Assembly (NCBI RefSeq): GCF_003704095.1
Contig: NW_020844494.1
Location: 186,001 to 250,000 of the forward strand
Length of the DNA: 64,000 bases
Reading direction: 5' to 3'
From: Pocillopora damicornis
Taxonomy: Eukaryota
A program made the position numbers and the translations under genes. Under the pieces are notes generated by a model, which saw nothing but the letters and a program-made list of their open reading frames with translations, did not search any database and was not told the origin of the DNA. Below are positions 30,342-46,088 of the stretch, piece by piece; positions within the stretch are counted from its first letter, which is position 1; every line of letters begins with the position of its first letter.

Positions 30342-31999
30342 TTACATGTCTTCACTGTCAAAGTACTGTTCTTCTTCATCTCTTCCTCGTATGGTCAGAT
30401 CATCATACTCATCATTTGCGTCAACTGAACTATAGTCAAACTCTTCTTCTTCACCTCTCATGAATTTGTCTTGCATTGCACTAAGAAATTCTTCATGGAG
30501 CATAAGTTTTTCTTCCTTAGTAGGACATCCCTTGATTGGACTCCCAGGTTCCACTGTAAGAATTAAAGGTGTTTACAGAAGTGACTAGAGACTGACGACC
30601 ATCATAACACAGCTGATTGTCTACGAGCAATTATAATCTGGGTTGTTCAAATCTGGGTTAAGATAACCCATGGTTAGCAAAAGAAAATTCAGTTGAAATC
30701 TTTTTGCTTGCAATTTGATCATTGGATGTTCTAAAAAGAATAGGGAAAGTTTTCTCTAAAAGGCTTTGGAAAAAAGAAATATAGAAACCTGCATTAAAAT
30801 TTAATCCTGTGCTAGCACTAATCAGCCTTTGAACAACTGGGCCCTGATGAAGACTTTTGCTCAAGTTGTCAAAACATTAGTCACAATTGGACAATCATTT
30901 TTTCAGCATAACTCTCACCCAGAGAGCTACACAACATAGTTACATAAAATTTTTGTTGGTGTGCTGTGAGAATTTCATGCTATATCCAAACAATTTCCTC
31001 AACCTAACCCTTTATTCCTAAGGACTAAACATCAATTCTCTATGTTGTTTCCCATACACTTCCTATCATCTAATATCTAAGATTTTGGTGTGGAATCAAA
31101 GGACATTTCCTAATTGAAGTGAACTCTGTATGCAGGTGAATGGAACATTCCATTTCTTTTAACCCCCCGCCCCCTCCACACACACCTGAAGAAGGCCAGA
31201 TTCTGATACCCAAAATTTTTGTTGTCATCACTTTTATTATTAATTTTTGAATCTGAAGGGTTCAAAATTATGTTGGTTTACTTGAAAAAATATTTAAACA
31301 GGCCCTATGCCACACCTCTTCGATGTTGGGTGTATATTACAATGGAGAAGGTGACTAAATTAAATAATCACCTTTATCGATTGAGCTGTCACTCTCCATA
31401 TCTGATTCTTCCTCTTCTTCTTCTAGACAAGCCTCCTGATCTCTCTGATAATTGAGATACCAATCGTTCATTTCCTTCTCTTGTCTATTCATGATCATTT
31501 GTGACAGGCACAGATCGTCTCCAACTTCAGCTCTGTCCCGGTCAAGTTTTTCCTCTGCAGTAAGATACTGACCTATATATTGTTCGTAAAGAAGAGGGGA
31601 CCTTTTTCTCATCTGCTCTTCGCTGAAGAAATCCGTGTCTTTCATTAATCGCTGTAAACATTCATATCGTCTGTTACGTATCCCTGTTTTCTTCTTCTTA
31701 CCATCAAGGATATTTTTTACTTCTTTAAGACGAAAATCTATCTCATATTCTCCCCTTAAATGTTCGAAATTTCCTAGGTCTTTTTCGGAAAGATATCTTC
31801 CAAATCGCATAAGAAAAGAAGCTGGTTTTTTATCGTAAAGCTCGTGTAAAATAGCAATTTTCTCATCCACAGCTAATTCTGGTTCGCCTCTCTGCTGACT
31901 TTTTACAACAGCATCAGTGCTTGCAATGCGAGAAAGCATGTGTTTCACGTTTTGCTCGTGTGTATCTGTGATGTTTTCTTCTTGAGCACATGCCGCCAT
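30342..31999 (-). CDS. CCDC97: Coiled-coil domain-containing protein 97, 2 exons (31372-31999, 30342-30553)
   Basis: KSQQRGEPEL, FLMRFG, IRNRRY, FFSEEQMRKRSPLLYEQYIGQYLT, FLSAMQDKFMRGEEEEFDYSSVD, DEEEQYFD. Confidence 0.92.
30636..30930. mobile_element. MITE relic (CAGGGCCCAGTTGTTCAAA terminus) abutting a second Penelope-like relic
   Basis: Terminal inverted similarity between 30636-30670 and 30810-30846, followed by CTGATGAAGACTTTTGCTCAAGTTGTCAAAAC...ACTCTCACCCAGA. Confidence 0.5.
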
Positions 32000-33038
32000 A
32001 TTGTTTTGACTCCAGGCCTCGCTCGTTCATAGAATCCCGCAGTGTTTGACAGGTTAGACAGGAAGTCAACCGAAACGAAACCGAAACGCGGGAAATTTTC
32101 ATTGATCAATAAATAATATCGTTTTCTGTCACATGATACACACGGGATCGTGGCGTAACCGGTATAAACACAAATTGAAACTGGAATTCCATGGAATTTG
32201 GCTCGGAATTCTTGTCCTTCAAGGTCATCAAACGGACCGAAGAGAATTCAGAATAGGTCAGGGAAGAATCAAAGGGCGGGTATTCAGCCAAACGATCGGA
32301 CTTTAGGTCCGATTTAAGTTTAGTAAAAGTTTCACATGCGAATTAGGCTCACTACGTATAAATAAACGATCGTACATTCATCTTCAACATGTCAACTTAT
32401 ACTTTATTATATTCATCGAAACAATATGACTTCCTTTGGACAAAAATTTTAACGATATGTACAAAATTTACAACATAATTCAAAAATTCAAATAGTTTGC
32501 ATCGAATTTTATATTTTAAATTTAGAACTATCATAAGGAATCGAAGAAAAAAATCAATATTCAGCCTTTGGTGGGCACCACCTACGTACAACGTCTCTCT
32601 CCTGAAAGAGTTCGTATTCAAAATAACTACGCTCTCTAGCTACATGACAATGTTCTAAAATCTACATAAAATCATCGACTTTTTCAACGGACACCAAAAA
32701 TATATTTTAACATTTAAATAACAAAAAACAATCACTCCAGAAAGAGCGCGTCCATATTCAATAATTCCTTTAGTAACGACATGTTTACAACATTTGCACT
32801 TCTTCGATCATTTCAAAAAACGAACAACTTTGAAAATTTATACATAGACTATGTTAACTTCTTAACTAAACCAAATATACGATTTAAGAGTTCTAGTAAT
32901 ATCAAAGTCTTTTGCCAGCGAAGGCGATCAACATCGCACGGTCTATCGATTCGTCAAATGCTTCTGTCCTTTCACATTTGTAAAATCGAAACGTAAACAA
33001 TGGAGCGCTTTCACAGCTGAGGTAGTTCGTCACGAACT

Positions 33039-33365
33039 TTATCTTCCCGCAAAACGAAAAGCTTGGAGCCACATCCTGTCTTTCTCACTCAGTGTTGAGA
33101 ACGTAGATGTACCAGAAAAGTTCGAAGCTCCTGAGATGGTCCTCGTTCGTTTCCTCCCTTTGGCTGGCCTTTGCCATGTGCTTGGCTCTTCAACGGACAT
33201 ACTGTCGATAGAGTCGATCGATTCTTGACTAGATGTTTGATAATCTGTACAAGAACAACTCCTTCCATTCCTCTGGCATCTCATCTTCTTTTTCCGGATC
33301 ACAATTGGAAAACAGCCTCCGATAAGGAAGAGAAAAGCGACCAGAATTTTACCAAGAAGAGACAT
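33039..33365 (-). CDS. Unknown 108-aa single-exon protein with N-terminal hydrophobic anchor, polybasic tract and C-terminal WLQAFRF motif (paralog A)
   Basis: Intact ORF with protein-level homology to ORF 42117-42401 at both termini. Confidence 0.7.
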   Translation of the reverse strand: MSLLGKILVAFLFLIGGCFPIVIRKKKMRCQRNGRSCSCTDYQTSSQESIDSIDSMSVEEPSTWQRPAKGRKRTRTISGASNFSGTSTFSTLSEKDRMWLQAFRFAGR

Positions 33366-33476
33366 CTCCTACGTCTAGAATTAATGCGTGGACGACTGAA
33401 TTGCTAATGAATTCGTCTACCTATTTGAATGGTAACTATACCGACCTTTGTACCAAAACAATAAGAATAGGACGCC

Positions 33477-33486
33477 ATGACGTCAT
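33477..33486. promoter_or_regulatory. Perfect CRE palindrome (ATGACGTCAT) ~110 bp upstream of small ORF A
   Basis: Direct reading; matches the CREB/ATF consensus TGACGTCA. Confidence 0.4.
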
Positions 33487-35358
33487 AACAAAATTACTTC
33501 TATGTAGGGTACAGTAAGTACCATTCTGACAAAAAGAAAATTGACGAGTCGCACGATTAAAATACCAAAAATGAACATTGCCTTATTCGTGAATACCTTA
33601 ATACCAAGTTGTTTTTGATGTATTGAATCTTTGATTTTTTTTTATCATGGCAATTTTCCTTCCTTGAAATAAAACCCTCGCTACACCTCCCCCGGTATGA
33701 AAATTTTTTTTACGCTAAATTTAACACTTTCCTTCGCGGGAACTCCGTGACAGTCTTGTGACAAGAGGTGCACATGTCGTGCTATTATTCCCTGCCTGTC
33801 ATGTGCGTGGATTACTCGCTTACATGGCAAAAACAAAATTTACCGGAGGTTACTTGAAAATGTCGAGCGAAGGGCATGAACTTGCGATTTTTTGAGCAAT
33901 AGTTAGATTAATGGGTGAAAATGTGCTCAGGTTCAGCTCTTTTTTTTTCTCTTTTTTTTTTCCAGTTTAATTCGCATTATTTCCATTCCAAGACTGCATC
34001 CTATTTGCCTCTGATCTATAGAGTTACAAAGCTTCGGCGGCTGCTAAAGGAATACCCTAAAAATATCTATTATGGTTGTTTTGATACCAGCGTTCTCCCA
34101 GGGTATTCCCGTGACTCGCAGAGTTCTGTCATAGGGTAGGCGATAAATTTTAAATTCGGGTGATGTAAAAATCAAGTGAAATTACACTTGCATTATTTGG
34201 GATGTTGTTTACTGACACGTCCTGGCGTGTAAGCCAAGCTTAGATTTCACTTCCTCCTATTTTCCTGTTTTTAGCTCCGATCACTTGATTGAAAAATATG
34301 ATGTACATTAAAGTGTTGATTTCACATGTATTTATTTCGATCTCTCGTTCGACGTCTTATTCAAACGATTCTAACATTTTTCCCATCGAAATCAATACAA
34401 TAATATGCCGAAAGCTTGTCTACGAGACAAGACTGAAACGTATACCTTACAGAAGGCACAAAGCCAGTATTATTTGAGAGATGAAGTTCCACAAGACGAC
34501 GATTGAATAAAAAAATTGAATTGGAGAAATGGGCTAAACTTGCTCTAATCAACTTCATCTTTACTCTCTTCTGTTTGATTATACATGTTTCTTTTTATCA
34601 CAAATATGCACTGCATAAGTAGCTTGCGTGCAAGTTAATGTAGAATGAAACGGGAAGAGGATTGAATTACGACTGGGTTTTGAGACGTACTAAAGACAGG
34701 GTTAAGGAAGGTCATGGAGTGAAAATACCTTTCGAAGGGTTATGTTGCAGAACAGAAATGTGCAACCGAAACTAATTCTCTCTTATTTCCCGTGAATCCG
34801 AACAGCATACTTCCATCTATTGTCACGCGTCACGCAAGTGGTTGTCTATCACAAGAGGAAACATCACTTAGCGACACCGAACAACTGCCGCGCAAGAGAC
34901 CAGCCACCAGTAAGCTACATACTTTAATTATGTTTTAAACAAATATTTTGGCACTTTTTCCTTGACGCTGATATCTGTGCGGAAACAAGCCAAAAAAGCA
35001 AGAGCTGAGAGAAACTCACACTATTCCAAACTCTGTAAAAAAAATTGAAAAAGTTATTATAAAATGGAACATCAAGAGAAATTGAAGATTTGCGTCACTA
35101 CCGCGTTCCAGGCATGCGCATCAAGAATGCACGATACAATCATGAGGAGGCTAAAAGGGAAGTGTGGCGGCGAGCACGCGCAGTGAATAGCCATTCATAT
35201 GTCATCAAAGGCACACTCAGCGGGCAAAAGTACACCCGTACCCTATCTACCATAAAGTTGAACTAACAATAGCCTTCCCGTAAGATATTAGTAGTAGGAA
35301 AAATTTACCAGAGACAAAGCGGACTTTCAAGAGGAAAAAAGATTGCAAAAGCTTTTAG

Positions 35359-38300
35359 ATGGCTACAGACGATCGTCAAATATCCGCGGGTCCAAGCGCC
35401 AATTCGAGCAGACTGGAAAATGAAGAACCTAACGTTCTACCCGCTCTGAGAGGCACAGAAAGTAATAATAATCTTAGGGGAGGGAGTCTGCCATTTGGCA
35501 TCTTTAGCCTGAATCAAGTTGACACAACAAACACTGCACCTCGCAGCTTTAGTGTCAGTGGCACCCGGGCCCGGGACACGCCCATCACCTTGGGCCTCTG
35601 CAGGGAAAATAAATCAGCTTTCGAAGATTTACCTGTCTTTCTAGGGAAGATTGGTCAAAATAAGGAAAATAGGTGAGCAAAGTTATGCAAATGGAAGTCG
35701 ATATCATCTGTAACGGAAAAGTTGTAAACAAAATGGTTCAGAGACGAGTCGACGGGAACAGAATGATTGTATAGGCTTCAACGACGAGGAAACTGCTGAT
35801 AACATTTTATAGACATAGCTTCACTCAGAACAACTATTATAGGCTAAACTTTATTGAGTTTAATTACCTCTTTAGAAAAAACGGATAAACTAATTTGACT
35901 GATTTGATTTCATGGATTTGACTCCCCACCTTCATCTTCTACCGAAGATGAAGGTGGGGAGGAAATAATTCCTATATTTCATGTTGGTTTAACATTCTAT
36001 TCTAACTCTTGAGCATAAATTACTCTATAACCTTTCCTTTCGTGTTCAATATTCTCTCCTTCCATAACTTTTTTCCATAGTGAGGGAGAATCTTCACGAC
36101 GCCCGAACGATGCGAATCTCAGTATTACCGAGTACGCATGCGAAAAAATAAAAAATGAAGATGATTCGTCGTCGACCAGGGACAGAAATGTATGGTAAAT
36201 TTTCAATGCTTGTAGAAATAAGACGTATAATAATTACTGGACGAGGTTTGATGGTACAAAGAAAGGAGTGCTTTGTCTCAGTTGAAGGGGTTATGGCAGA
36301 AATCAAATGCTTTCGTTCTTAATTAAATAATCTCTTCTGTTAAAATCTCAAATGGACACACGGTAACTCGGTTGTCTTCAGCTGTATACATAATTGAGTT
36401 CTCTTATTCAGTACCAGTTCGGTTCACATAGCTATTCGCGAAAAACCTTTCAGATACTTTTGACGGGAACCCTCTTCCAGACATGGACCCCTGCTGCGTC
36501 CAGAGTAGAGCCTGAAAAATCATTGTCCTCCAATTTAACCAGGTTTGTAAAATCGACAAGTTAGGAATTAAAAGGTCTTCTCTTTTGTGCCTTTTTTCAT
36601 GAAATTGTTTTGCTCACGATATTTTTTGCTGTTTGTGGTGGTAATTTTAAAATATTTGACGCTTTCTCCTACAAACGGTCAAAGTAGAAAGAGAGAGACT
36701 GGTTCTAAGGTGTTCGTAGCTGAGCTAGTGAAGATTCGACTGTGAATGTCTTTATCCTACATGATTTGATGGCTTGTAAGTTGTTATCGACCTTTCGGAA
36801 ACTGTAATTTTGAAGACAGTGGCAATTCGTAAAACAGGCAAAAAGCGGAGAGCGCCAAGAATCAGAAACTCATCGATTCCTTGAGACAGCTAGTAACAGA
36901 ACCAAGTTCAACAAAGAGACTGAACAAAAAAGAAGATGAAAGGAAAAAGGGAAGCCAGAACGAGAGCAACGAAACACTGGACACAATACTAAAGCAAACA
37001 GCCCATAGACAAACTGAAAAAGAAGTAGCTGACAACTCAAAAGAGCCGGAGGACAATGAGGACAACGCTTCTGAAAGCAGGGTAGGAACTATTGGGCTTT
37101 CTTTGATAACAAAGATTATGACCTCTAATGGTCGTTACTAAATAGTGATAGTTTCCCTACCGTGAAAATAATGATCAATGAAAAATTAGCAAACGCCAAA
37201 CGTGTGGTTTCGCTTTCTGACGTCTTCTGTGATCTTTACGTCTGATTTCCGAAAAATCACAAGGAAGATGTAGAAAATCTCTTTCGTTTCTAAATTTCAA
37301 GTAAGATTTTCTCCTCTTCCTCTTCCTCTTCCCCCTTCGTATTCTTTTTGTATTCACGCGCGGTAAAGAACCAATCGCAATGAGTGTATAAAATTTCAAG
37401 TTACAATTTTTCTCTTCCTCTCCCCCCTTTGTATTCTTTTTGTATTCACGCGCGGCAAAGAACCAATCGCAATGAGTGTATAAAATTTCAAGTTACAATT
37501 TTTCTCTTCCTCTCCCCCCTCTGTATTCTTTTTGTGTTCACGCGCGGCTAAGAACCATCCGCAATGAGTCTATAAAATTTCAAGTAACAATTTTTCTTTT
37601 CCTCTCCCCACTTTGTATTCTTTTTGTATTCACGCGCGGCTAAGAACCAATCGCAATGCTTTTATTAAATTACAAGTGACAATTTTTCTCCTCACCTCCC
37701 CGCTTTGTATTCTTTTTGTATTCACGCGCGGCAGTAATGGGCTCCTGCGCGCGGCTAAGAACCAATCGCTATGCGTGTATTAAATTTCAGCTGGCAATTT
37801 TTTTCCTCCTCTCCCCGCTTTGTATTCTTTTTGTATTCACGCGTGGCTAAGAGCCAATCGCAATGCGTATATAATTTAGCCTAATATATAAACCACGCTT
37901 GTAAATAAAAGCTCGATGAACTTCGTTTGGAAGAAAAGAAGTACAATTTGTTAACTTTAATAGCTGTATATGTCGCAAAATAATCGCACAGACTTCGTCG
38001 TAAAAGTCCACTTTTTAATCTTGTTGGCTTTTTATTCTACTGAATTGGGACACGGAAGTTTCAAGACAAACTAAAAGGAAATCACTTTTTAAACTTTTTG
38101 AGGAAATTAATTTCTTAGAGAATAATTTTTTGTTACCGCTATTCCCCTCCCTTCCTCGAAAGTTTATGTTTCCGCTTAAATCGGTTTGGGAGGACTAAGA
38201 AAGGTCTGTACTTGGAGGCAGATTCACAGTTTTGTGCTGTAAAAACCAGAGCCTTAGTCTCGCTTTTCTTTTCCACTTCCAGGAACGTTTAGATATAGTG

Positions 38301-39632
38301 GAATCCCTTTTGGAGTTTCCATTCTTACCTCTTCAAACCGACAGTCGCCGTAAATCATCCCCAGGGTCTTTGGAACCATCTTCTGCCCCCGCCCATCAAA
38401 CTGGTGCCTCTCGCCAGAGACATTTCTCTCTTGGAGGCGTACCACAATCCCCGTCTACTTCAGGACAGTCCGAAGCCCTTTCAGCTCCGAGAAGTTCCAA
38501 CGAGGCAACGAGGAGACGAAGCTCGCAATCGAGGAGGAGCTCCATAGCCGCATCGTTGGCAGGGCCTGGTGAGACTAAGAAAGGTGCGTTGGGATTAGGT
38601 ACGCTGGCAGCTTCTCTAGTGAAATGGAAAATAAATAGTGCGAGAAAAGTGATAAAGACGCAAGAGACCATTGCTAAGGTAAACTTTTACGTCGAGGTTA
38701 CCAGGAGCTCTCTCAACCTGGTTAAATAACCTAAAAAGTAAAGTATTTCTCTGATCAGAAGTTAACAAAACTATGCCAAAAGCTTCCTCATTCCCTTTTA
38801 AAATATACAACAGAGCCCTTGTAGTCTTTAAAATATCATTCAGCAGTTCACTTGTGGTATAAGGCCTCCTTGCCATGAGTTTAAGGTAAAAATGTAATCT
38901 CCTAAATGTTTTTTTTTTCAGGCAAGATAAAGTTTTTGAATTGTTTTTACAATTTCAGGATGCCAAGCACCAAGAATTTATGGATAGAGCAGCTGACCGA
39001 ATCAAAACTGAGGTAGGTGCTGGAGATTACTGATCAAATGGAAGCAATTAAAGGAAAAAATTGTATCATTCTCTGTGATTAAATGCATAAGAAATGATTG
39101 TTGTATTGTAGCAAATGCCTGACTGAAATATTATTATTTTAGCTTCCAAGGTCTTTATTAATCAGTATCCAGGAAGAGGCTTATCCTATTGTACTGAGAA
39201 CAGCTCAAGGTACTGGAAATTTTACCAGATATTACTAAAACATATTATCAAAAAAACATGCAGAATTCAAGTTCTATGCCAGCATATTGTGCCCTTTATC
39301 TGTAAAATGAGAGGTTTGGCATCTAGTCCCGACCACATACCCCTAAGGATGGCTGGAATTCAATTCCAGAGTACAATCTTGCCTGTCACATAGCTAAAAG
39401 AAAGGATTTGGAAATGTTGCATGATTTGAGTGTACATAACACTTACAAGTAACAACCTTTTTCACATACTTTTACATTTCAAGTTACTTTCTTAATGCAT
39501 AGGTTAATATTGTAAAATGAATTTGTTATTTTACAAGCTTATAGATCTCAGCTGGGAGCAAAACATAAGCTGACAGTTCAAGCTTCAGAACGACTGGCCG
39601 ACCTAATGCGAGACCTTACCAATCCTTACTAA
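35359..39632 (+). CDS. Uncharacterised, largely disordered protein (~8 exons) with a helical C-terminal domain resembling CatSper zeta (TEX40)
   Basis: Phase-compatible exons 35359-35672, 36081-~36189, ~36412-36543, 36838-37081, 38283-38678, 38959-39012, 39143-39209, 39538-39632. The C-terminus reads HQEFMDRAADRIKTELPRSLLISIQEEAYPIVLRTAQAYRSQLGAKHKLTVQASERLADLMRDLTNPY*. The middle exon boundaries are uncertain. Confidence 0.75.
35922..35961. repeat. Perfect 18-bp inverted repeat with 4-nt loop
   Basis: CTCCCCACCTTCATCTTC-TACC-GAAGATGAAGGTGGGGAG. Confidence 0.95.
37292..37875. repeat. ~92-bp tandem array x6 (intronic)
   Basis: Units start at ~37292, 37391, 37483, 37575, 37667 and 37782; most contain TTCACGCGCGG and AACCAATCGC, with minor variants. 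Confidence 0.92.
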
Positions 39633-39859
39633 TACAACTGTCAACAGTATCAACTTATCTCTTCTTTTAATAGAAAACTGTATGAAGAATTTTACTTAAT
39701 AAACCTTTATGTGTTTGATTGAAAAACTGTCCTGGTGTCCAAAATCTGCTTTAAACATCTGCTACTAAGTAGTTTTTGTTATTCAGGTTTTTTTTTCTTC
39801 TTACATTAGGCTTATATAGCATGGAGATACTTAACTCTCTCAAGACATACTAAAATCTG

Positions 39860-41131
39860 CTATCTCCAAATAAAATATTTTTTCTTATTGCTATAAACAA
39901 TTTCTCCTTTTGAATCACTAGTAAAAATATTAAATTCAAAAGTGACATTCATATGCCGTCTATATTTAGGATTTCGTCTCAAGGTGGCAGAACCTTCAAT
40001 AAAATTACCAACATGAACAGTCACTGGCTCTTCTAGTAGAAAAAGATTTTGTTTCCAGTGAGTTTGTTCTTGATCAGGTGCTGTTGACAGTATCACACAT
40101 TCTGATGTATCTGTGATGGGTATCCCTCCAAAAGTTACACTGAACCATGAACACAGCCCATGTAATGTACCTTCCTTACTAATCACAAACTCAAAATTTT
40201 CAGACATCAGTTCAAGATTTTCCTTCACAAACGTGGACATGTCAATATCCAAAAGAACTGCTCCTTGAGACAAGCAGTCCCTTGGGTCAAGCTCATGGTT
40301 ATGCAAAGGTCTGTTAAGAACTTCTGTCTTAGCTCTGTTAAGAAAAGGAGAAAAATCAAAACCATATTGATTGTTCCATGCAGTAACTTTCTCTTTATAA
40401 GCTTCTTCTGCACAACAAGGTACAACAAATAACTTTGCATTTGAAGGCCATATCACACCATCAGGCTTCAACCATCTGTCTCGTGCATACAGCACTGTGT
40501 CGATCATAAACTCGAAAACAAGGAAAGTACCCATCCACTCAGAGATAATAATGTCAACTTTCTCTGGTAACTCAATTTCTTCAATCTTTCCTGTGATAAC
40601 GGTGATTATCTTGTGTAAATCGTTTCTTTCAACGAGTTCTTTGGTCAGTTCCCCGATATCTACACTTCCATCCACAGCGTAAACTTTACTTGCCTTTCCA
40701 TCTTTAGCACAAAACAAGCTCAGAATCCCTGAACCACATCCAACATCTAAGACAGTTTTTCCAATGAAAACATCTCGATGCTTTTGGATGGCGTTTCGAT
40801 AAGCAAGAGTTCTTGGATGATCGCTTAACATCTCAAGGTGGATTTTCACTTTACCGTATGCGCCAAAGTACTCTTCATCCTGCCAATCGTGATTCTGTGT
40901 GTGCCGAGATAGGTACTCAGAAACAGGTACCACATAGGACACCGGAACATATCCACATATTTCATCTAGTTCGGCCCACCACCAAACACTGGAACTCTCG
41001 CTTAAAATAGTCATTTCGTCACCTTCGTTGAAGCTCAATTGAGTGTTATCTTCTGCGACGAAATCAGCCATTGCAACAACTAATTTTGGAGACTGTTTTT
41101 CTCTCTTATCCACATCGTTGTTAGCAGCCAT
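39860..41131 (-). CDS. PRMT2: Protein arginine N-methyltransferase 2 (SH3 + type I PRMT), intronless CDS
   Basis: N-terminal SH3 (AMADFVAEDNTQLSF...WWW...GYVP), motif I VLDVGCGSGILS, post-I VYAVD, double-E loop SEWMGTFLVFE, and THW loop. Confidence 0.95.
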   Translation of the reverse strand: MAANNDVDKREKQSPKLVVAMADFVAEDNTQLSFNEGDEMTILSESSSVWWWAELDEICGYVPVSYVVPVSEYLSRHTQNHDWQDEEYFGAYGKVKIHLEMLSDHPRTLAYRNAIQKHRDVFIGKTVLDVGCGSGILSLFCAKDGKASKVYAVDGSVDIGELTKELVERNDLHKIITVITGKIEEIELPEKVDIIISEWMGTFLVFEFMIDTVLYARDRWLKPDGVIWPSNAKLFVVPCCAEEAYKEKVTAWNNQYGFDFSPFLNRAKTEVLNRPLHNHELDPRDCLSQGAVLLDIDMSTFVKENLELMSENFEFVISKEGTLHGLCSWFSVTFGGIPITDTSECVILSTAPDQEQTHWKQNLFLLEEPVTVHVGNFIEGSATLRRNPKYRRHMNVTFEFNIFTSDSKGEIVYSNKKKYFIWR

Positions 41132-42116
41132 GTTGGCCGGGAAGAATGGTGATGAAGCGAACCAATCAACAAATCCCAGCGGTCATCATTACGGCTAACC
41201 AGTTCGGAGAGCTTTTCCTCTAATTTTATTTTTCCAGAAATGAAACTACTCTTGCCTTGCGGGCTTCAAAGCGAAATCTAAGGGCTCATTGACAGGTCTC
41301 CATGTAAAATTATGTGGCGAGAAATTGGCGAGCGCAAAAGTTTTAGCGAGAGGAAGGCGCCCTTGCCATGATCATTGCGTGACCTTATTCCCAGACCACT
41401 CTCGGCTTGCTAGCCCCTCTGAGGATTCTTCCCTATCACAGTTCAAAGGGTATCCATCTAAAGAAAATATGAAAAACAGCTTCCTATCATTAACGCCAAC
41501 TACTGTGCGCTCTTAGTCATTGTGACCTCCCAAAAGATTAATGCTAAAATGACAATACCTGACTAAGATATTATTTTGGATGTTTCAAACTCTTCTGTTC
41601 AACTTACTTAAAATGTATTGTGATACGTTATATGTACCGCCCCTTGGCAAAGCTAAGTAGCATGAATGTCACGTTTCTCTAAATCTATCTGCTGTGACTT
41701 TTGAGGAGAACTTTTCACGGATACATCCCTCGCGGAAATTTTGTAGCTATTTGACTACGTGTTACAGCATAAACTGAAAAGCCTGTGCTGTATGTATATT
41801 TAAATCCTAAAATAATAATAAATCAATTGGCCACCAGATTAAATGTTAAAAGCGGAATATCATATTTCGCGTTGATAATGTACCGATAACGTACGGCCTG
41901 GATAACATAAGTGTCAGTTTAAACTTAGATCATGCGGTAATGCTGTCAACAGAAAAACTTTGTCACATCACATGTGGGCGCATGGCCAAATTCACGCGAA
42001 AGTCAAATTGTAGCTCATTGTTGACTGGCTAGTACAAAGTATGATTGCCTGTACAAGGGTTTTATGTCGATTGCGCAGCATGTTTTATTGAGTAAAAACA
42101 AACAATCTGAGCAATT

Positions 42117-42401
42117 ATGAGAGCACCGGGAATTGTAGCTTTCTTGTTTCTCAGTGGATGTCTACAATTTTTGTTTCCAAGAAGACGACAGCGAACACAA
42201 AGAGGAAAGAGAGATTGTGCCATAGATGGAAGGAAAATAAGGAAAGTTCCCACCAACGAAACGTTTAGCAAATCACATGAATCGTCCGTTAGCCGTAAAG
42301 GAACGAAAAAACCATCCCGAGTTTCCCACTTCTGTGGACCGCAAAATCTGAACAGAGAAGATCAGCTGTGGTTACAAGCATACCGCTTTGGAGCGAGATA
42401 A
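42117..42401 (+). CDS. Unknown 94-aa single-exon protein with hydrophobic anchor, polybasic tract and C-terminal WLQAYRF motif (paralog B)
   Basis: Homologous to 33039-33365: VAFLFL-x-GC at the N-terminus and D-x-(L/M)WLQA(Y/F)RF at the C-terminus. Confidence 0.7.
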   Translation: MRAPGIVAFLFLSGCLQFLFPRRRQRTQRGKRDCAIDGRKIRKVPTNETFSKSHESSVSRKGTKKPSRVSHFCGPQNLNREDQLWLQAYRFGAR

Positions 42402-43924
42402 ACAAGGAACATTTTCAGCCTGCTACACGTCAAATACACAAGGATACTGATGAACTCAATGGAATTTTTTACTATATTTTTTTTATTTTGAAATCTGAAA
42501 GAAGGGATGCCGCCTTTGTTCCCAGTAATGTTTGACAGGATGTTTTAACAACCGCAACAGGAAACCCGGAAGTCAACAATAATTAGCTTCAGCCAAAACG
42601 ACGACATGCATTGAGAGACACTCGTGCTATTGTGAAACTTAATTTTTTGCTTAAACGCAATTTTACAATGATTTCTGCAGTGAACGAATATTGCAATATT
42701 TAAAATGATAGTTGCAGAGATTTCATGTTTATACCCGCTAACCGGTCTATTCGGACAAGATTAATTTGCCTTGCAATAATTCAGTCAGTAATGAGGTCAT
42801 TGATAATTATATCAATATTTAAAAGGGTAACGAGCAAATTTTGGTTCTTGTAGAAATGAGCCACTTGGATGCTTTTTTCTATTAACATGTCATGCTTCAG
42901 TAATGTTTATTGATTCAATTTTTATTTGCTACCCTTGCTATATGTTTTACCCGCCCAGAGCTAAACTGTAATCTTATTGTTTACAAAAGATAAAAGTTGA
43001 AGTGGCCTTTGATGAGGGCAAATCTTTAAAGAACAACAAATAATGTTATCAGAAATGCACATACGATAAAAGAGACACATTAAGTTTTAAATGACAACTG
43101 TATAGTACGAATGTAAAATTGTATGACAAACTTTGACCGACAATGTATTCTTCAGCGAGCTGATGGGTTGCCAGGTTTCAGCTTGTAAAGCAAAATTATT
43201 TATATAAACGGGAATAAAGTTTTGTGGAGCTATGTAAAAACCTGTTTAAGACTATTGAGGAGAAACAGTTACTGAAGCTTGGTGTACCAAGTCGAGGTCA
43301 AAACCAGGACAGGAGCAACACAAGCACAAGGACCTGCTCAGTCGCATGCTAAACAAGCAGCCATGGTGAGAATTTGAAGCCTACGTAACACGTTGTATGG
43401 AAAAGAAAATAACCTATTCTCTTCATAAAGCGAAGCAAGCGCTTGTCACGAGAGGTGCGTTAGTTTTATGATTCTAACGATTCCTCGAGTAAATTAATGC
43501 CGCAACGCTTTATGCTTTCAGCGAGTGAATGGGTTAACAACCTTCGCCCTTCTCCGCGAGACTTGAATCTGGGACACTTAAGCATAGCTCAATGACAAAT
43601 TTTTCATTGCTTGAATGGCACTCCTCGTAGCCTCATAAATTTTAATAGCGTTCGCCCAAAACATTGAAAAAAAATTCCAATCCTTCAGCTGCAATATAGG
43701 TTTCCCCTGGTAAACAACATTTACAGTAAAGCATGAAAATAGCAGTGCTGATAATTTGCAAGAATAATAATCTTAATACTAGTAATAACAAAATGAATCT
43801 ATTGGCTCAATTGGCCACCAGATTAAACCATGCTCTACAGAATGCAAAGGTGGCTTGAGGTCGGCTGTTTTTGAATTTTCTTCTACGAACGCATACTTCC
43901 CAGCATCCCGTCAATCTGAATAAC

Positions 43925-43990
43925 CGCTGACTGTCAGCTGTGTCTGGGTGTTCTTCTCCAAGTAGCCTCCGTCTAATGTAAAGCGCGTAA
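43925..43990 (-). pseudogene. Isolated TPR-repeat fragment (kinesin light chain/NPHP3-type)
   Basis: ALYIRRRLLGEEHPDTADS motif with no flanking repeats or plausible gene context. Confidence 0.55.
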
Positions 43991-44370
43991 ATGAACATGC
44001 ACTCTACTGGTGGAAATGAAAATGGTTGATTTTGAGCTTGGTGGCTAAAACGAAAAACGACGCATTTGTCTCTAACAGACGCACTTGGAGACTTTCAAAC
44101 AAAATCATGTTGTCGAGGACCATCCCTTCAGTTTTTGTCTATGTTTACTCAGCTTCTTTTGAGTTTTCTTGTTTTATTTTGGGAAAGTGAACCTCCTAGA
44201 CACATGGGGCGGGAAAGCCACAATGAAACAAAATCTACACCTCTCAACAACTCGATACCTAAACCAACACCTTTATTTTTTAATTATTTTCTTACAAGCA
44301 AGTCCATCGATACTTTGATTGAGTTTTTTTCCCCAAGAATCCCAACACCACCGATATTACTTGAAGTAAA

Positions 44371-44816
44371 CTAGTGATTAGCCTTTTTCTGACAAAGAAT
44401 CACAGGGGCATCTTTGGCGTGCCGTGAAACGTCAAGACTGCAATAAACATCATTCCATCTTCCTTTCGCGGAACCTGTTCCCCACATATGACCACATTTC
44501 TCTGAGAGCGAATTTGGTTCACGTGTAAACCAAGCATTGTAGCCAGTTAGTAGAGTGTCATCTGCCCAGTAGAACTTATTGTCTGCCTTACGATGGAGAC
44601 CAAGCCATACACCAAATAGGGTTACTTTTTTCTGCTTGAGGAGGAGCCCGAAGATGAACTGATTCTCTGCGCTCGATGTGATCTTTACGAGATCTCCGCC
44701 GAACCTTTGGCAGTTTCGTCTGGCGTCTTTCCATTCCAAGGTTGTAGTGTCGATGATGAGGAAACAGGAATTTCCATGGCGCACCCAACCGTCTGGACAG
44801 GCCGACCCTCTCTGGT
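44371..44816 (-). CDS. C-type lectin domain, terminal exon (EPN/WND, mannose/glucose-type); upstream exons probably in or beyond the gap
   Basis: Acceptor ttccctcttcttag, then SACPDGWVRHGNSCF...WKDARRNC...WLGL...WFTREPNSLSEKCG...GRWNDVYC...ILCQK. Confidence 0.88.
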
Positions 44817-45034
44817 CTAAGAAGAGGGAAGCGGTAAATTACTGTTAATAGACAGAAAAGTCACACATCTGTAGATCTTCGATCAGGTGTGCTTGTAGGT
44901 GAAGCTAGTAGGGGAGGGAAAAAGTCAGGGAACACTCAGGGGCGCTGTGACTTTCGGGCATTCGAAAGTAATTTAGTTGAAAAAGTTTAACTGTCACTGT
45001 AAATTTTGATAATTTCTGGTGGTCAATCTGTGTT

Positions 45035-45133
45035 NNNNNNNNNNNNNNNNNNNNNNNNNNNNNNNNNNNNNNNNNNNNNNNNNNNNNNNNNNNNNNNNNN
45101 NNNNNNNNNNNNNNNNNNNNNNNNNNNNNNNNN
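45035..45133. other. Assembly gap
   Basis: Run of Ns. Confidence 0.95.
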
Positions 45134-45577
45134 NCCCCCCTGTTACTGACCTACTAGTTTCTGCCTTTCTCAAAAAGGATTTTGTCCGAGCGACGAAATA
45201 TCTCCAAAAGTTTAAAAATTATTATACAATTTTTGTACCAAAGACAATAATTTTTCCACAAGGTTAGTCTCTGGGTCATGACAGTGTCTATATTTTTCTA
45301 CGTGTATTTATAAAGGAGTCGTTCAACCTATTTCCCGATGTCATTTAAAGAAAAAAATTGCGTACTTGAAATATAGCACATTAAGTTTTGACGATATGGC
45401 ATGAGAAAACAAGTGACAGAATGATCGTCATATGTTACAATTAATTGCAATGAGAGGTGAATTGTTCGTGGTGCTGTCAATTCCTGTCGCGATTTGATAA
45501 ACACCATGCGCGGCTTTGATTTTGACATCTCAGAAGTGAAGAAGGCAGAAGGTATGGATGGAAGACCAAATCTTCAG

Positions 45578-45886
45578 CTTATCAGTCCCCTAAATTTTAT
45601 TCTTACCACAATGAATACAAAAGGTTTGCTGGCAGATTTATTTAAAAAAAAAAACCAAACAAAACAAAACAAAACATGTTAACACACAACAGAAACTAAT
45701 ATTAAGTACACCCCCTAATAGACTATGATGAGTGTTCTCCTTCTCCTCTTATCAGTCACCCTAAATTTTATTCTAGCCACAATAGATAAAATAGGTTTGT
45801 CGCAGATTTATTTTTAAAAAATATTAACACACAACAGAAACTACGATTAAGTATACTCCCTAATTGATTATGATGAGTGCTCTCCT
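45578..45886. repeat. Diverged tandem duplication of ~140-165 bp
   Basis: CTTATCAGTC...AAATTTTATTCT...TTAACACACAACAGAAACTA...TATGATGAGTG occurs at 45578-45741 and 45748-45886. Confidence 0.85.
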
Positions 45887-46088
45887 TAAACCTCTTGTTG
45901 ACTCAGAGGTGATACGTCACAGGTGGGGAGGGGGGAAATATTCTATCTCAGCGCCTCGGGGGGGCTAGATGGGCCATTAGTGACAGAACCGAAATTTACC
46001 CACTCGAAGGATTTCGTTTCATAAATTTGGTTTAAAAATGCCTATTTCATTTTACGAAGCAGCAAAGCTTTCAAACGAAGAATTGTAA

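What the first reader, a model, noticed from the sequence alone, without database searches (positions are those of the whole stretch)
33039..42401. Two diverged paralogs of an unknown small membrane/secreted protein family
Seen in sequence: ORF A (33039-33365, -) and ORF B (42117-42401, +) are single-exon, divergently oriented and 8.7 kb apart. They share an N-terminal block (GKILVAFLFLIGGCFPIVIRKKKMRCQR vs GIVAFLFLSGCLQFLFPRRRQRTQR) and a C-terminal block (LSEKDRMWLQAFRFAGR* vs LNREDQLWLQAYRFGAR*), with a variable Ser/basic linker. Inference: conservation limited to the termini implies selection on a membrane anchor and a terminal helical binding motif. I do not recognise the family. Options include a membrane-tethered regulator with PKA-like sites (RKRTRT, RKGT) or a peptide precursor, since ORF A ends in G-R (an amidation signal) and ORF B contains RFG.
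Basis: partly seen in the sequence, partly recalled or inferred. Interest (0 to 1): 0.75.

Follow-up and report, generated by a model that had tools for sequence, protein, structure and literature searches.

The report
Orphan coral small membrane phosphoprotein family
Two small neighbouring genes in a Pocillopora coral are real, transcribed, old paralogs of an undescribed coral protein family that most likely sits in a membrane by its first 25 residues and carries a kinase-target tail in the cytoplasm.

Summary
ORF A (33039-33365, -) and ORF B (42117-42401, +) exist, are 31% identical (E 1e-12) and are the only two copies in the 234-Mb genome. Both are genes. ORF B lies in an unspliced ~1.2-kb contig in 4 of 4 RNA runs. 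ORF A's words stand in 12 RNA runs. Both have orthologs under purifying selection (dN/dS 0.10-0.46 for clade A, 0.13-0.39 for clade B). The tree gives three supported clades: A, B, and a third clade, C, which has no hydrophobic N-terminus and three copies of the RxRTISG cassette. No Pfam, PDB-sequence or ESM Atlas relative was found, and no paper holds the motif strings.

Conservation is not limited to the termini. In clade A the whole tail is conserved: an acidic Ser cluster, an invariant RxRTIS, a six-step S-x-x-S ladder and the C-terminal DxxWLQAFRFxxR helix.

Best reading: a membrane protein with its N-terminus outside and its tail in the cytosol, acting as a phospho-regulated adaptor. The membrane anchor and the tail's location are well supported by sequence; the kinase switch is inference. 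The peptide-precursor reading is disfavoured because clade C lacks a signal sequence and the terminal Gly-Arg is not conserved in clade B. It is a new orphan family of a familiar kind, of moderate interest.

The parts
33039..33365 (-). ORF A coding sequence, 108 aa plus TAA stop (clade A paralog)
   Evidence: Twenty relatives at 56-99% identity. dN/dS 0.10-0.46.
33297..33347 (-). ORF A residues 7-23: hydrophobic anchor containing the GGCFP motif
   Evidence: Kyte-Doolittle mean 2.83 over 17 residues, followed by net +7 in the next 15 residues. AlphaFold2 helices 3-15 and 21-28, broken at GGCFP. The Cys is invariant in clades A and B.
33087..33155 (-). ORF A residues 71-93: RKRTRTIS basophilic site followed by six Ser at period 3 (S78 to S93)
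   Evidence: R.RTIS in 14 of 14 clade-A rows and an S/T ladder of 6-7 steps. Nearly invariant columns.
33042..33086 (-). ORF A residues 94-108: C-terminal motif E-K-D-R-M-W-L-Q-A-F-R-F-A-G-R, predicted helix
   Evidence: D96, Q101, A102 and R104 are invariant in all 27 rows of three clades. AlphaFold2 helix 94-107, block pLDDT 72-76.
33424..33569 (-). Conserved upstream block of ORF A: CRE-type octamer TGACGTCA at 33478-33485 and invariant GTACAAAGGTCG at 33442-33453 (probable promoter and start region)
   Evidence: Alignment of 7 upstream regions. Positions of full and half sites. Each occurs exactly once in the window.
32403..32408 (-). AATAAA 631 nt after the ORF A stop: probable poly(A) signal
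   Evidence: A signal lies 626-659 nt after the stop in the 9 of 10 clade-A loci that extend that far. Not tested with reads.
42117..42401 (+). ORF B coding sequence, 94 aa plus TAA stop (clade B paralog)
   Evidence: Ten relatives at 35-97% identity in the exhaustive HMMER search. dN/dS 0.13-0.39.
42126..42176 (+). ORF B residues 4-20: hydrophobic anchor (weaker; GCLQF in place of GGCFPF)
   Evidence: Kyte-Doolittle mean 1.92, followed by net +6.
42348..42398 (+). ORF B residues 78-94: C-terminal motif L-N-R-E-D-Q-L-W-L-Q-A-Y-R-F-G-A-R
41998..43240 (+). ORF B transcription unit: unspliced RNA of about 1.2 kb, with AATAAA at 43213-43218
   Evidence: contigs 41998-43240 (X1), 42045-43229 (X5), 42028-43181 (X12), 42015-42888 plus pieces to 43191 (X15). 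No joints. Bins 41400-41799 and 43400-43599 are empty in all 4 runs. Sequence.

Best explanation
ORF A and ORF B are two anciently duplicated, intronless, polyadenylated genes of an undescribed coral-restricted family. Each encodes a roughly 100-residue single-pass membrane protein. About 6 residues lie outside or in the lumen. A 17-residue anchor ends in an invariant Cys, a possible S-acylation site. A strongly basic stop-transfer cluster follows. The rest of the chain is a disordered cytosolic tail. In clade A the tail carries an acidic Ser cluster. It also carries an invariant R-x-R-T-I-S site of the type used by Akt/SGK/S6K/PKA-class (AGC) kinases, then a six-step S-x-x-S ladder that a priming-dependent kinase such as CK1 could extend. 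The tail ends in a conserved helix, D-x-x-W-L-Q-A-F-R-F-x-x-R. The proposed mechanism is a membrane-tethered phospho-switch or adaptor: phosphorylation of the cassette just before the helix controls what the helix or the phospho-cassette binds, for example 14-3-3. SHOWN: the genes, their transcription, the paralogy, purifying selection, the motif architecture, the absence of known homologs, and the soluble clade C. INFERRED: the topology, acylation, the kinases, the switch and the partner.
For: Real genes: ORF B lies in an unspliced ~1.2-kb contig in 4 of 4 RNA runs from 4 studies, with silent flanks. Words of ORF A's stretch stand in 12 runs recorded as RNA, at shares of 0.54-0.75. All 16 metagenome loci carry intact ORFs. 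dN/dS is 0.10-0.46 in 26 of 28 clade-A pairs (2 saturated) and 0.13-0.39 in 15 of 15 clade-B pairs. Paralogy: E 1e-12, and only 2 copies in the genome. The tree supports the clades at A 96/98, B 98/97 and C 100/99. Anchor and topology: hydropathy is 2.35-2.99 for A and 1.92-2.75 for B over 17 residues. Net charge is +6 to +8 in the 15 residues after the segment, against +1 to +3 before it. AlphaFold2 predicts helix 3-15 and 21-28, disorder over 34-58 and helix 94-107. Cytosolic tail: clade C (3 clusters, all starting MVKG) has no hydrophobic segment (0.31-0.53). It still keeps the cassette, in three copies, and the C-terminal motif. Phospho-cassette: R.RTIS in 14 of 14 A rows and 3 of 3 C rows, with S/T ladders of 6-7 steps in A and 5 in C. 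Promoter: a CRE-type site is kept at -114 to -131 in the window and in 8 of 10 clade-A loci.
Against: No experiment or predictor of topology, acylation or phosphorylation was available. The kinase and 14-3-3 consensus motifs are recalled, not tested. Clade B has lost RxRxxS at the homologous place (0 of 10 rows). Pocillopora ORF B also lacks six residues there, so the 'switch' cannot be the shared function of A and B. The C-terminal helix is not clearly amphipathic: shuffles reach its hydrophobic moment in 1-34% of trials in the 5 rows tested of 27. UniRef calls the P. meandrina ortholog 'Secreted protein'. One RNA run (X15) shows G>A at 42378, which turns the otherwise invariant Ala of the C-terminal motif into Thr. 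The AlphaFold2 model is of low confidence overall (mean pLDDT 59.6). Variant density is 1 per 285 nt in the coding part against 15 per 839 nt in the 3' UTR, and the difference is not significant (Fisher p 0.087).
Confidence: 0.55

Rival explanations
1. Secreted peptide precursor. The hydrophobic N-terminus is a cleaved signal peptide. Convertases cut at the basic clusters. The C-terminal ~35 residues, or a shorter FRFA-amide-type end, are released as a hormone or neuropeptide.
For: The UniRef automatic name for the P. meandrina ortholog is 'Secreted protein'. G-G-C could serve as small residues at a cleavage site. Clades A and C end in G-R, which could give a C-terminal amide. Basic clusters (KGRKRTR) precede the conserved C-terminal third.
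Against: Clade C keeps the cassette and the end motif without any hydrophobic N-terminus (hydropathy 0.31-0.53). The hydrophobic segment with GGCFP is conserved between A and B, with the Cys invariant, which is unusual for a signal peptide. Net +6 to +8 directly follows the segment. Eight of 10 clade-B rows do not end in G-R. There is one candidate peptide per precursor. The Hexacorallia survey that includes P. damicornis mostly reports multi-copy preprohormones of other types: GPRGamide, Antho-RFamide, GLWamide, TRFamide, FHIRamide (PMC7523074, passages read; its additional files were not seen). The Ser ladder behind an RxRxxS site is typical of cytosolic kinases (recalled).
Confidence: 0.12
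2. The same protein, but anchored in an organelle (mitochondrial outer membrane or ER) as a signal-anchored tether or import/regulatory subunit, not a plasma-membrane signalling adaptor.
For: It has a very short N-terminus, a short 17-residue anchor containing Gly, Cys and Pro, and a basic cluster immediately behind it. From memory, this arrangement resembles the targeting signal of signal-anchored outer-membrane proteins. Short anchors are also typical of early secretory compartments.
Against: The clade-A anchor is very hydrophobic (2.35-2.99), which favours ER-type insertion over mitochondria (recalled rule, not tested). There is no homology to any organelle protein.
Confidence: 0.2
3. Chance ORFs, or conserved non-coding RNA or promoter sequence, not proteins. 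Alternatively, ORF B is a decaying copy.
For: The ORFs are short. Pocillopora ORF B sits on a long branch (0.91), has lost six residues of the cassette, and has three upstream ATGs in its leader.
Against: Frames are intact in 16 of 16 loci and dN/dS is well below 1. The 90% cluster of ORF B has 29 members, and 14 of the 15 listed are 94 aa. The RNA contigs are polyadenylated-library contigs.
Confidence: 0.03

Closest known systems
Transmembrane adaptor proteins of vertebrate leukocytes (PAG/Cbp, LIME, LAT type)
   Same: The layout is the same: a very short extracellular N-terminus without a cleaved signal, one membrane span, cysteines at or behind the cytosolic end of the span, and a disordered cytosolic tail whose function lies in phosphorylated linear motifs. 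The layout is taken from the abstracts of PMC2213442 and PMC2194117 in the listing; the rest is recalled.
   Different: There is no sequence similarity (Pfam blank). The tail is 80 residues, not hundreds. Its motifs are Ser/Thr (RxRTIS plus an SxxS ladder), not tyrosine-based. It has a conserved C-terminal helix. It is an animal-lineage-restricted coral family.
Small single-pass pump/channel regulators with kinase sites (phospholemman/FXYD1; phospholamban-type micropeptides)
   Same: They are of similar size (about 50-110 aa), with one span and a basic juxtamembrane stretch. A basophilic-kinase site in the cytosolic part switches the activity (recalled).
   Different: There is no FXYD motif and no Pfam FXYD or phospholamban match. 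The orientation and anchor end differ, since phospholamban is C-terminally anchored. No partner is known here.
Cnidarian neuropeptide preprohormones
   Same: Both have an N-terminal hydrophobic segment, basic clusters, and a C-terminal Gly-Arg (in clades A and C).
   Different: There is a single candidate peptide. G-R is not conserved in clade B. Clade C lacks a signal. The end does not resemble any of the families listed for Scleractinia in PMC7523074 (passages read).

Membership tests
Any curated protein family (Pfam-A) | Score above the gathering cut-off for a family model | tested here: not met
   ORF A, ORF B, P0108, L018 ORF and L003 ORF: 0 families at E up to 1. The A5 profile against PDB sequences had a best E of 1. 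ESM Atlas gave no usable hit for ORF A or P0108.
Cnidarian neuropeptide preprohormone | Cleavable N-terminal signal peptide in all members | tested here: not met
   Clade C (3 of 3 rows) has no hydrophobic N-terminus. For A and B, cleavage could not be tested because no signal-peptide predictor was available.
Cnidarian neuropeptide preprohormone | Conserved amidation donor (Gly before the basic processing residue) at the peptide's end | tested here: not met
   G-R ends 14 of 14 A rows and 3 of 3 C rows, but only 2 of 10 B rows.
Cnidarian neuropeptide preprohormone | Several peptide copies per precursor (usual, not obligatory) | tested here: not met
   The end motif occurs once per protein. Multi-copy is the rule for families #1-5 in PMC7523074.
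Transmembrane adaptor proteins (LAT/PAG/LIME type) | Short exoplasmic N-terminus, single span and cytosolic tail | tested here: inconclusive
   Hydropathy and charge bias fit, as does the AlphaFold2 model. Topology was not tested experimentally.
Transmembrane adaptor proteins (LAT/PAG/LIME type) | Tyrosine-based signalling motifs in the tail | tested here: not met
   The ORF A tail has one Tyr, which is not conserved. The conserved motifs are Ser/Thr-based.
FXYD / phospholemman | FXYD signature and Pfam match | tested here: not met
   No Pfam hit and no such motif in the alignment.
Transposon or dispersed repeat | Many copies in the genome, or transposase/retro-element domains | tested here: not met
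   Two copies in 234 Mb. The flank is syntenic with a CCDC97-like gene in other corals.

The most novel reading that the evidence does not exclude
This would be an anthozoan-restricted signalling module that has never been described. It consists of a phospho-cassette (R-x-R-T-I-S-G-x-S-x-F-S-G plus a Ser ladder) coupled to a terminal helix (D-x-x-Phi-Phi-Q-A-Phi-R-Phi-x-x-R). The module is deployed either on a short, probably acylated N-terminal membrane anchor (clades A and B) or as a soluble protein with three cassettes (clade C). Clade A would be transcribed from a promoter with a conserved cAMP-response-type element. That would make it a coral-specific membrane feedback adaptor of cAMP/AGC-kinase signalling, possibly recruiting 14-3-3.
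Probability: 0.2. Interest if true: 0.6.

Novelty: new variant of a known kind. Interest (0 to 1): 0.4.

Why it matters
Small intronless ORFs like these are easily missed by gene annotation. Of the 30 clusters whose members I looked up, only one holds organism-named entries: Porites evermanni and P. lobata, in the P0014 cluster. The only other named protein is the P. meandrina entry P0001. The family is nevertheless conserved, at least between Pocillopora and Porites, and is under purifying selection. It adds a well-defined, testable candidate to the poorly known membrane-proximal signalling of reef corals. The candidate has an invariant basophilic kinase site, a Ser ladder, a conserved terminal helix, a natural soluble variant and a conserved CRE-type promoter element. 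It is not a surprise in kind, since lineage-restricted micro-membrane proteins are common.

Tried and rejected
Known-family assignment: Pfam, PDB sequences with the family profile (best E 1), and ESM Atlas twice all gave nothing.

Wider homologs: the exhaustive HMMER search used ORF B only, which is the most divergent member, and found 10 hits, all in the family. The word-indexed profile search gave 31 hits, 30 clearly in the family plus P0038. Searching with P0038 gave only clade C. Remote relatives may still be missed.

Organism names: three cluster look-ups of 30 clusters named only Porites evermanni and P. lobata; P. meandrina was named. The taxon range of clades B and C therefore remains unknown.

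Amphipathic-helix idea: the hydrophobic moment of the last 15 residues is not exceptional (5 of 27 rows tested), so I dropped 'amphipathic' as a claim.

Other ideas were considered by eye only, against recalled consensus motifs, and not pursued. The IQ/calmodulin motif, RVxF (PP1), the beta-TrCP DSGxxS degron and the PIF-pocket motif do not fit in register across the clades. The bacterial lipobox likeness (L-S/G-G-C) was rejected as coincidence in a polyadenylated animal gene.

Bicistronic ORF A with CCDC97-like: rejected. The conserved block at 32100-32190 sits just before the CCDC97-like ATG, with its own promoter-like motifs. A conserved AATAAA lies about 630-660 nt after the ORF A stop. 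No reads were left to test this.

Inverted-duplication remnants: outside the coding parts, the DNA alignment of the two loci with 200-nt flanks shows only a short GTACAAAG...GTAT likeness near the presumed starts.

Literature: no paper holds the four motif strings or the four accession numbers.

Rows dropped: I left out L015-L017 (same protein as L014) and L008 (same protein as L007). In some searches I used 27 rows only, leaving out members whose database entries carry upstream extensions or read through a TGA stop. Supplements of PMC7523074 (the preprohormone sequences) were not seen and could bear on the neuropeptide rival.

Full report
OBSERVATION. Each ATG is preceded by a close in-frame stop: TAG two codons before ORF A and TGA three codons before ORF B. 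BLASTP of A against B gives 31% identity and 50% positives over 101 columns, E 1e-12. A six-frame search of the whole assembly (234,350,878 bases, 4393 contigs) with ORF A returns only ORF A and ORF B, the latter at E 1.1e-5. The pair is therefore a true two-member family in this genome and not a repeat. At the DNA level the two loci align only within the coding parts, plus a short GTACAAAG...GTAT stretch upstream.

WHOSE GENOME. The best hit of ORF A is a 108-aa 'unnamed protein product [Pocillopora meandrina]' at 99% identity, so the window is from a Pocillopora stony coral.

BOTH ARE GENES.

(a) Transcription of ORF B. I laid Logan contigs of four RNA libraries from four studies (three poly(A)/oligo-dT, one cDNA) on 40000-45999. 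Each holds a contig collinear with the genome across ORF B:
- X1: 41998-43240
- X5: 42045-43229
- X12: 42028-43181
- X15: 42015-42888, plus pieces to 43191
There are no joints. Bins 41400-41799 and 43400-43599 are empty in all four runs. An AATAAA lies at 43213-43218. This fits an unspliced mRNA of about 1.2 kb, although contigs cannot prove ends.

(b) Transcription of ORF A. Twelve runs recorded as RNA hold 0.54-0.75 of the sampled words of 32700-33700. A share of 0.75 is what an RNA starting near 33450 would give, but that is an inference.

(c) Orthologs. The searches gave the following:
- ORF A: 20 proteins at 56-99% identity.
- ORF B: 10 proteins at 35-97% identity in the exhaustive HMMER search.
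- Family profile: 31 proteins, of which 30 have E at most 1.2e-21.
- Metagenome scan: 16 loci, 10 of clade A and 6 of clade B, each with an intact frame of 98-109 codons.

(d) Selection. NG86 dN/dS is 0.10-0.46 in 26 of 28 clade-A pairs (2 pairs had saturated dS). It is 0.13-0.39 in 15 of 15 clade-B pairs (L008 and L015-L017 were left out as duplicates). Clade B evolves faster. Pocillopora ORF B sits on a long branch of 0.91.

(e) Points against. Among the four RNA runs the coding part of ORF B shows 1 variant in 285 nt, against 15 in 839 nt of 3' UTR, which is only a trend (p 0.087). That one variant (42378 G>A, run X15) changes the otherwise invariant Ala of the end motif to Thr.

FAMILY STRUCTURE. 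A maximum-likelihood tree of 27 rows gives three supported groups: A (14 rows, 96/98), B (10 rows, 98/97) and C (3 rows, 100/99). Both A and B contain deep diversity, and both occur in the same metagenome (Ga0126343: L003 is B, L009 is A). The A/B duplication therefore predates the split of several coral lineages. Named clade-A members come from Pocillopora and Porites. From memory, these two genera lie on the two main branches of Scleractinia. Clade C (P0038, P0107, P0108) is absent from this genome, and its organisms are unnamed.

ANATOMY.
- Anchor. Residues 7-23 of ORF A form a 17-residue hydrophobic segment (Kyte-Doolittle 2.83; clade A 2.35-2.99, clade B 1.92-2.75). It ends in G-G-C-F-P, and the Cys is invariant in A and B.
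- Basic cluster. The next 15 residues carry net +6 to +8 in all 24 A and B rows, against +1 to +3 before the segment. By the positive-inside rule (established knowledge) this places the N-terminus outside and the tail in the cytosol.
- Acidic Ser cluster. In clade A this is SIDSIDSMSVEEPTTW.
- Phospho-cassette. R-x-R-T-I-S occurs in 14 of 14 A rows. Serines then follow every third residue: six steps, S78 to S93, in ORF A.
- End motif. L-S-E-K-D-R-M-W-L-Q-A-F-R-F-A-G-R. D96, Q101, A102, R104 and F83 are invariant over all 27 rows of three clades.
- Model. AlphaFold2 with the 27-row alignment gives helices 3-15 and 21-28 (broken at GGCFP), no confident structure over 34-58, and a terminal helix 94-107 with block pLDDT 72-76. 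Mean pLDDT is 59.6.
- Clade B. It keeps the anchor, the basic cluster, S-R-A-S-H-F-S-G and the end motif, but has no RxRxxS at the homologous place (0 of 10 rows). Pocillopora ORF B lacks six residues there.
- Clade C. It has no hydrophobic segment (0.31-0.53) but three R-x-R-T-I-S-G cassettes and the end motif.

MECHANISM. The soluble clade C shows that the cassette and the end motif work without entry into the secretory pathway. This is the strongest argument that the tail of A and B is cytosolic. R-x-R-x-x-S is the recalled consensus of Akt/SGK/S6K/RSK-type AGC kinases. pS-x-x-S is the recalled priming rule of CK1. R-[ST]-x-pS resembles the recalled mode-I 14-3-3 site. I therefore read clade A as a membrane-tethered phospho-switch or adaptor. 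A basophilic kinase primes S78, the ladder is filled towards the helix, and binding by the helix or by the phospho-cassette changes. All of this paragraph after its first two sentences is inference. Because clade B lacks the site, the function shared by the whole family must lie in the anchor, the S-x-F-S-G block and the terminal motif. The helix is not clearly amphipathic, so I treat it as a protein-binding motif and not a membrane-binding one.

PROMOTER. Upstream of ORF A a block is conserved among seven species-level sequences. A CRE-type TGACGTCA lies at 33478-33485, the only copy in the 64-kb window (on its own not significant, since 31 of 100 shuffles have at least one). GTACAAAGGTCG lies at 33442-33453 and is invariant. 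Among the 10 clade-A loci, full or half CRE sites lie at -114 to -131 in 8. L010 has only a half site at -69, and L014 has too little upstream sequence. The ORF B side has none.

NEIGHBOURHOOD. ORF A is followed on the same strand by a 214-aa CCDC97-like gene (31355-31999, PF09747 E 4.4e-21). Of the 10 clade-A loci, 7 keep its coding part, 2 more keep its promoter block, and one is too short. Between the paralogs lies a single-frame SH3-PRMT gene (39860-41131), which is transcribed.

COMPARISON AND NOVELTY. No curated family, solved structure or Atlas cluster matches. No paper holds the motif strings or the accession numbers. In layout the proteins resemble vertebrate transmembrane adaptor proteins (abstracts of PMC2213442 and PMC2194117) and small kinase-regulated single-pass regulators (recalled), but they fail the defining features of both. 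They also fail three features of cnidarian preprohormones (PMC7523074, passages read; its supplements were not seen).

VERDICT. This is a real, expressed, conserved, undescribed small-protein family. Its kind, a small single-pass phospho-regulated membrane protein, is familiar. Interest is moderate.

Noticed in passing
window 39860-41131 (-): A single open frame of 423 aa with SH3, methyltransferase and PRMT_C domains (PRMT2-like architecture), apparently intronless. RNA contigs are collinear over 40000-41192 in 4 of 4 runs.
   Followed up: partly
window 31355-31999 (-), promoter block 32100-32190: An intronless 214-aa CCDC97-like gene (PF09747) lies directly downstream of ORF A on the same strand. 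The microsynteny is kept in other corals. Its conserved upstream block contains TTTCCCGCG (E2F-like; consensus recalled).
   Followed up: partly
window 42041-42116 (+): The ORF B leader holds three upstream ATGs (42041, 42064, 42080; 16, 18 and 3 codons). The ORF A leader holds none in its last 90 nt.
   Followed up: no
window 37384-37783 (+): Three head-to-tail units of about 92 bp, seen as near-identical 55-56-aa ORFs in the ORF list. This is an intergenic tandem repeat.
   Followed up: no
window 44268-44818: RNA contigs in X1 and X5 end at 44818 with the same loose sequence beyond. This is probably an exon edge of a neighbouring spliced gene.
   Followed up: no
L009, L011, L012, L014-L018 (stop codons); proteins P0002, P0005, P0010, P0012, P0016, P0032, P0033, P0035, P0036: Database entries of clade A that continue as ...AGRW... 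are gene calls that read the TGA stop as Trp. The true proteins end at G-R.
   Followed up: yes
window 35359-35676 (+) and 38232-38729 (+): Two Ser/Pro-rich ORFs of 105 and 165 aa lie between the paralogs, without a Pfam match. They may be exons of other genes; another note of the scan concerns 38959-39632.
   Followed up: no
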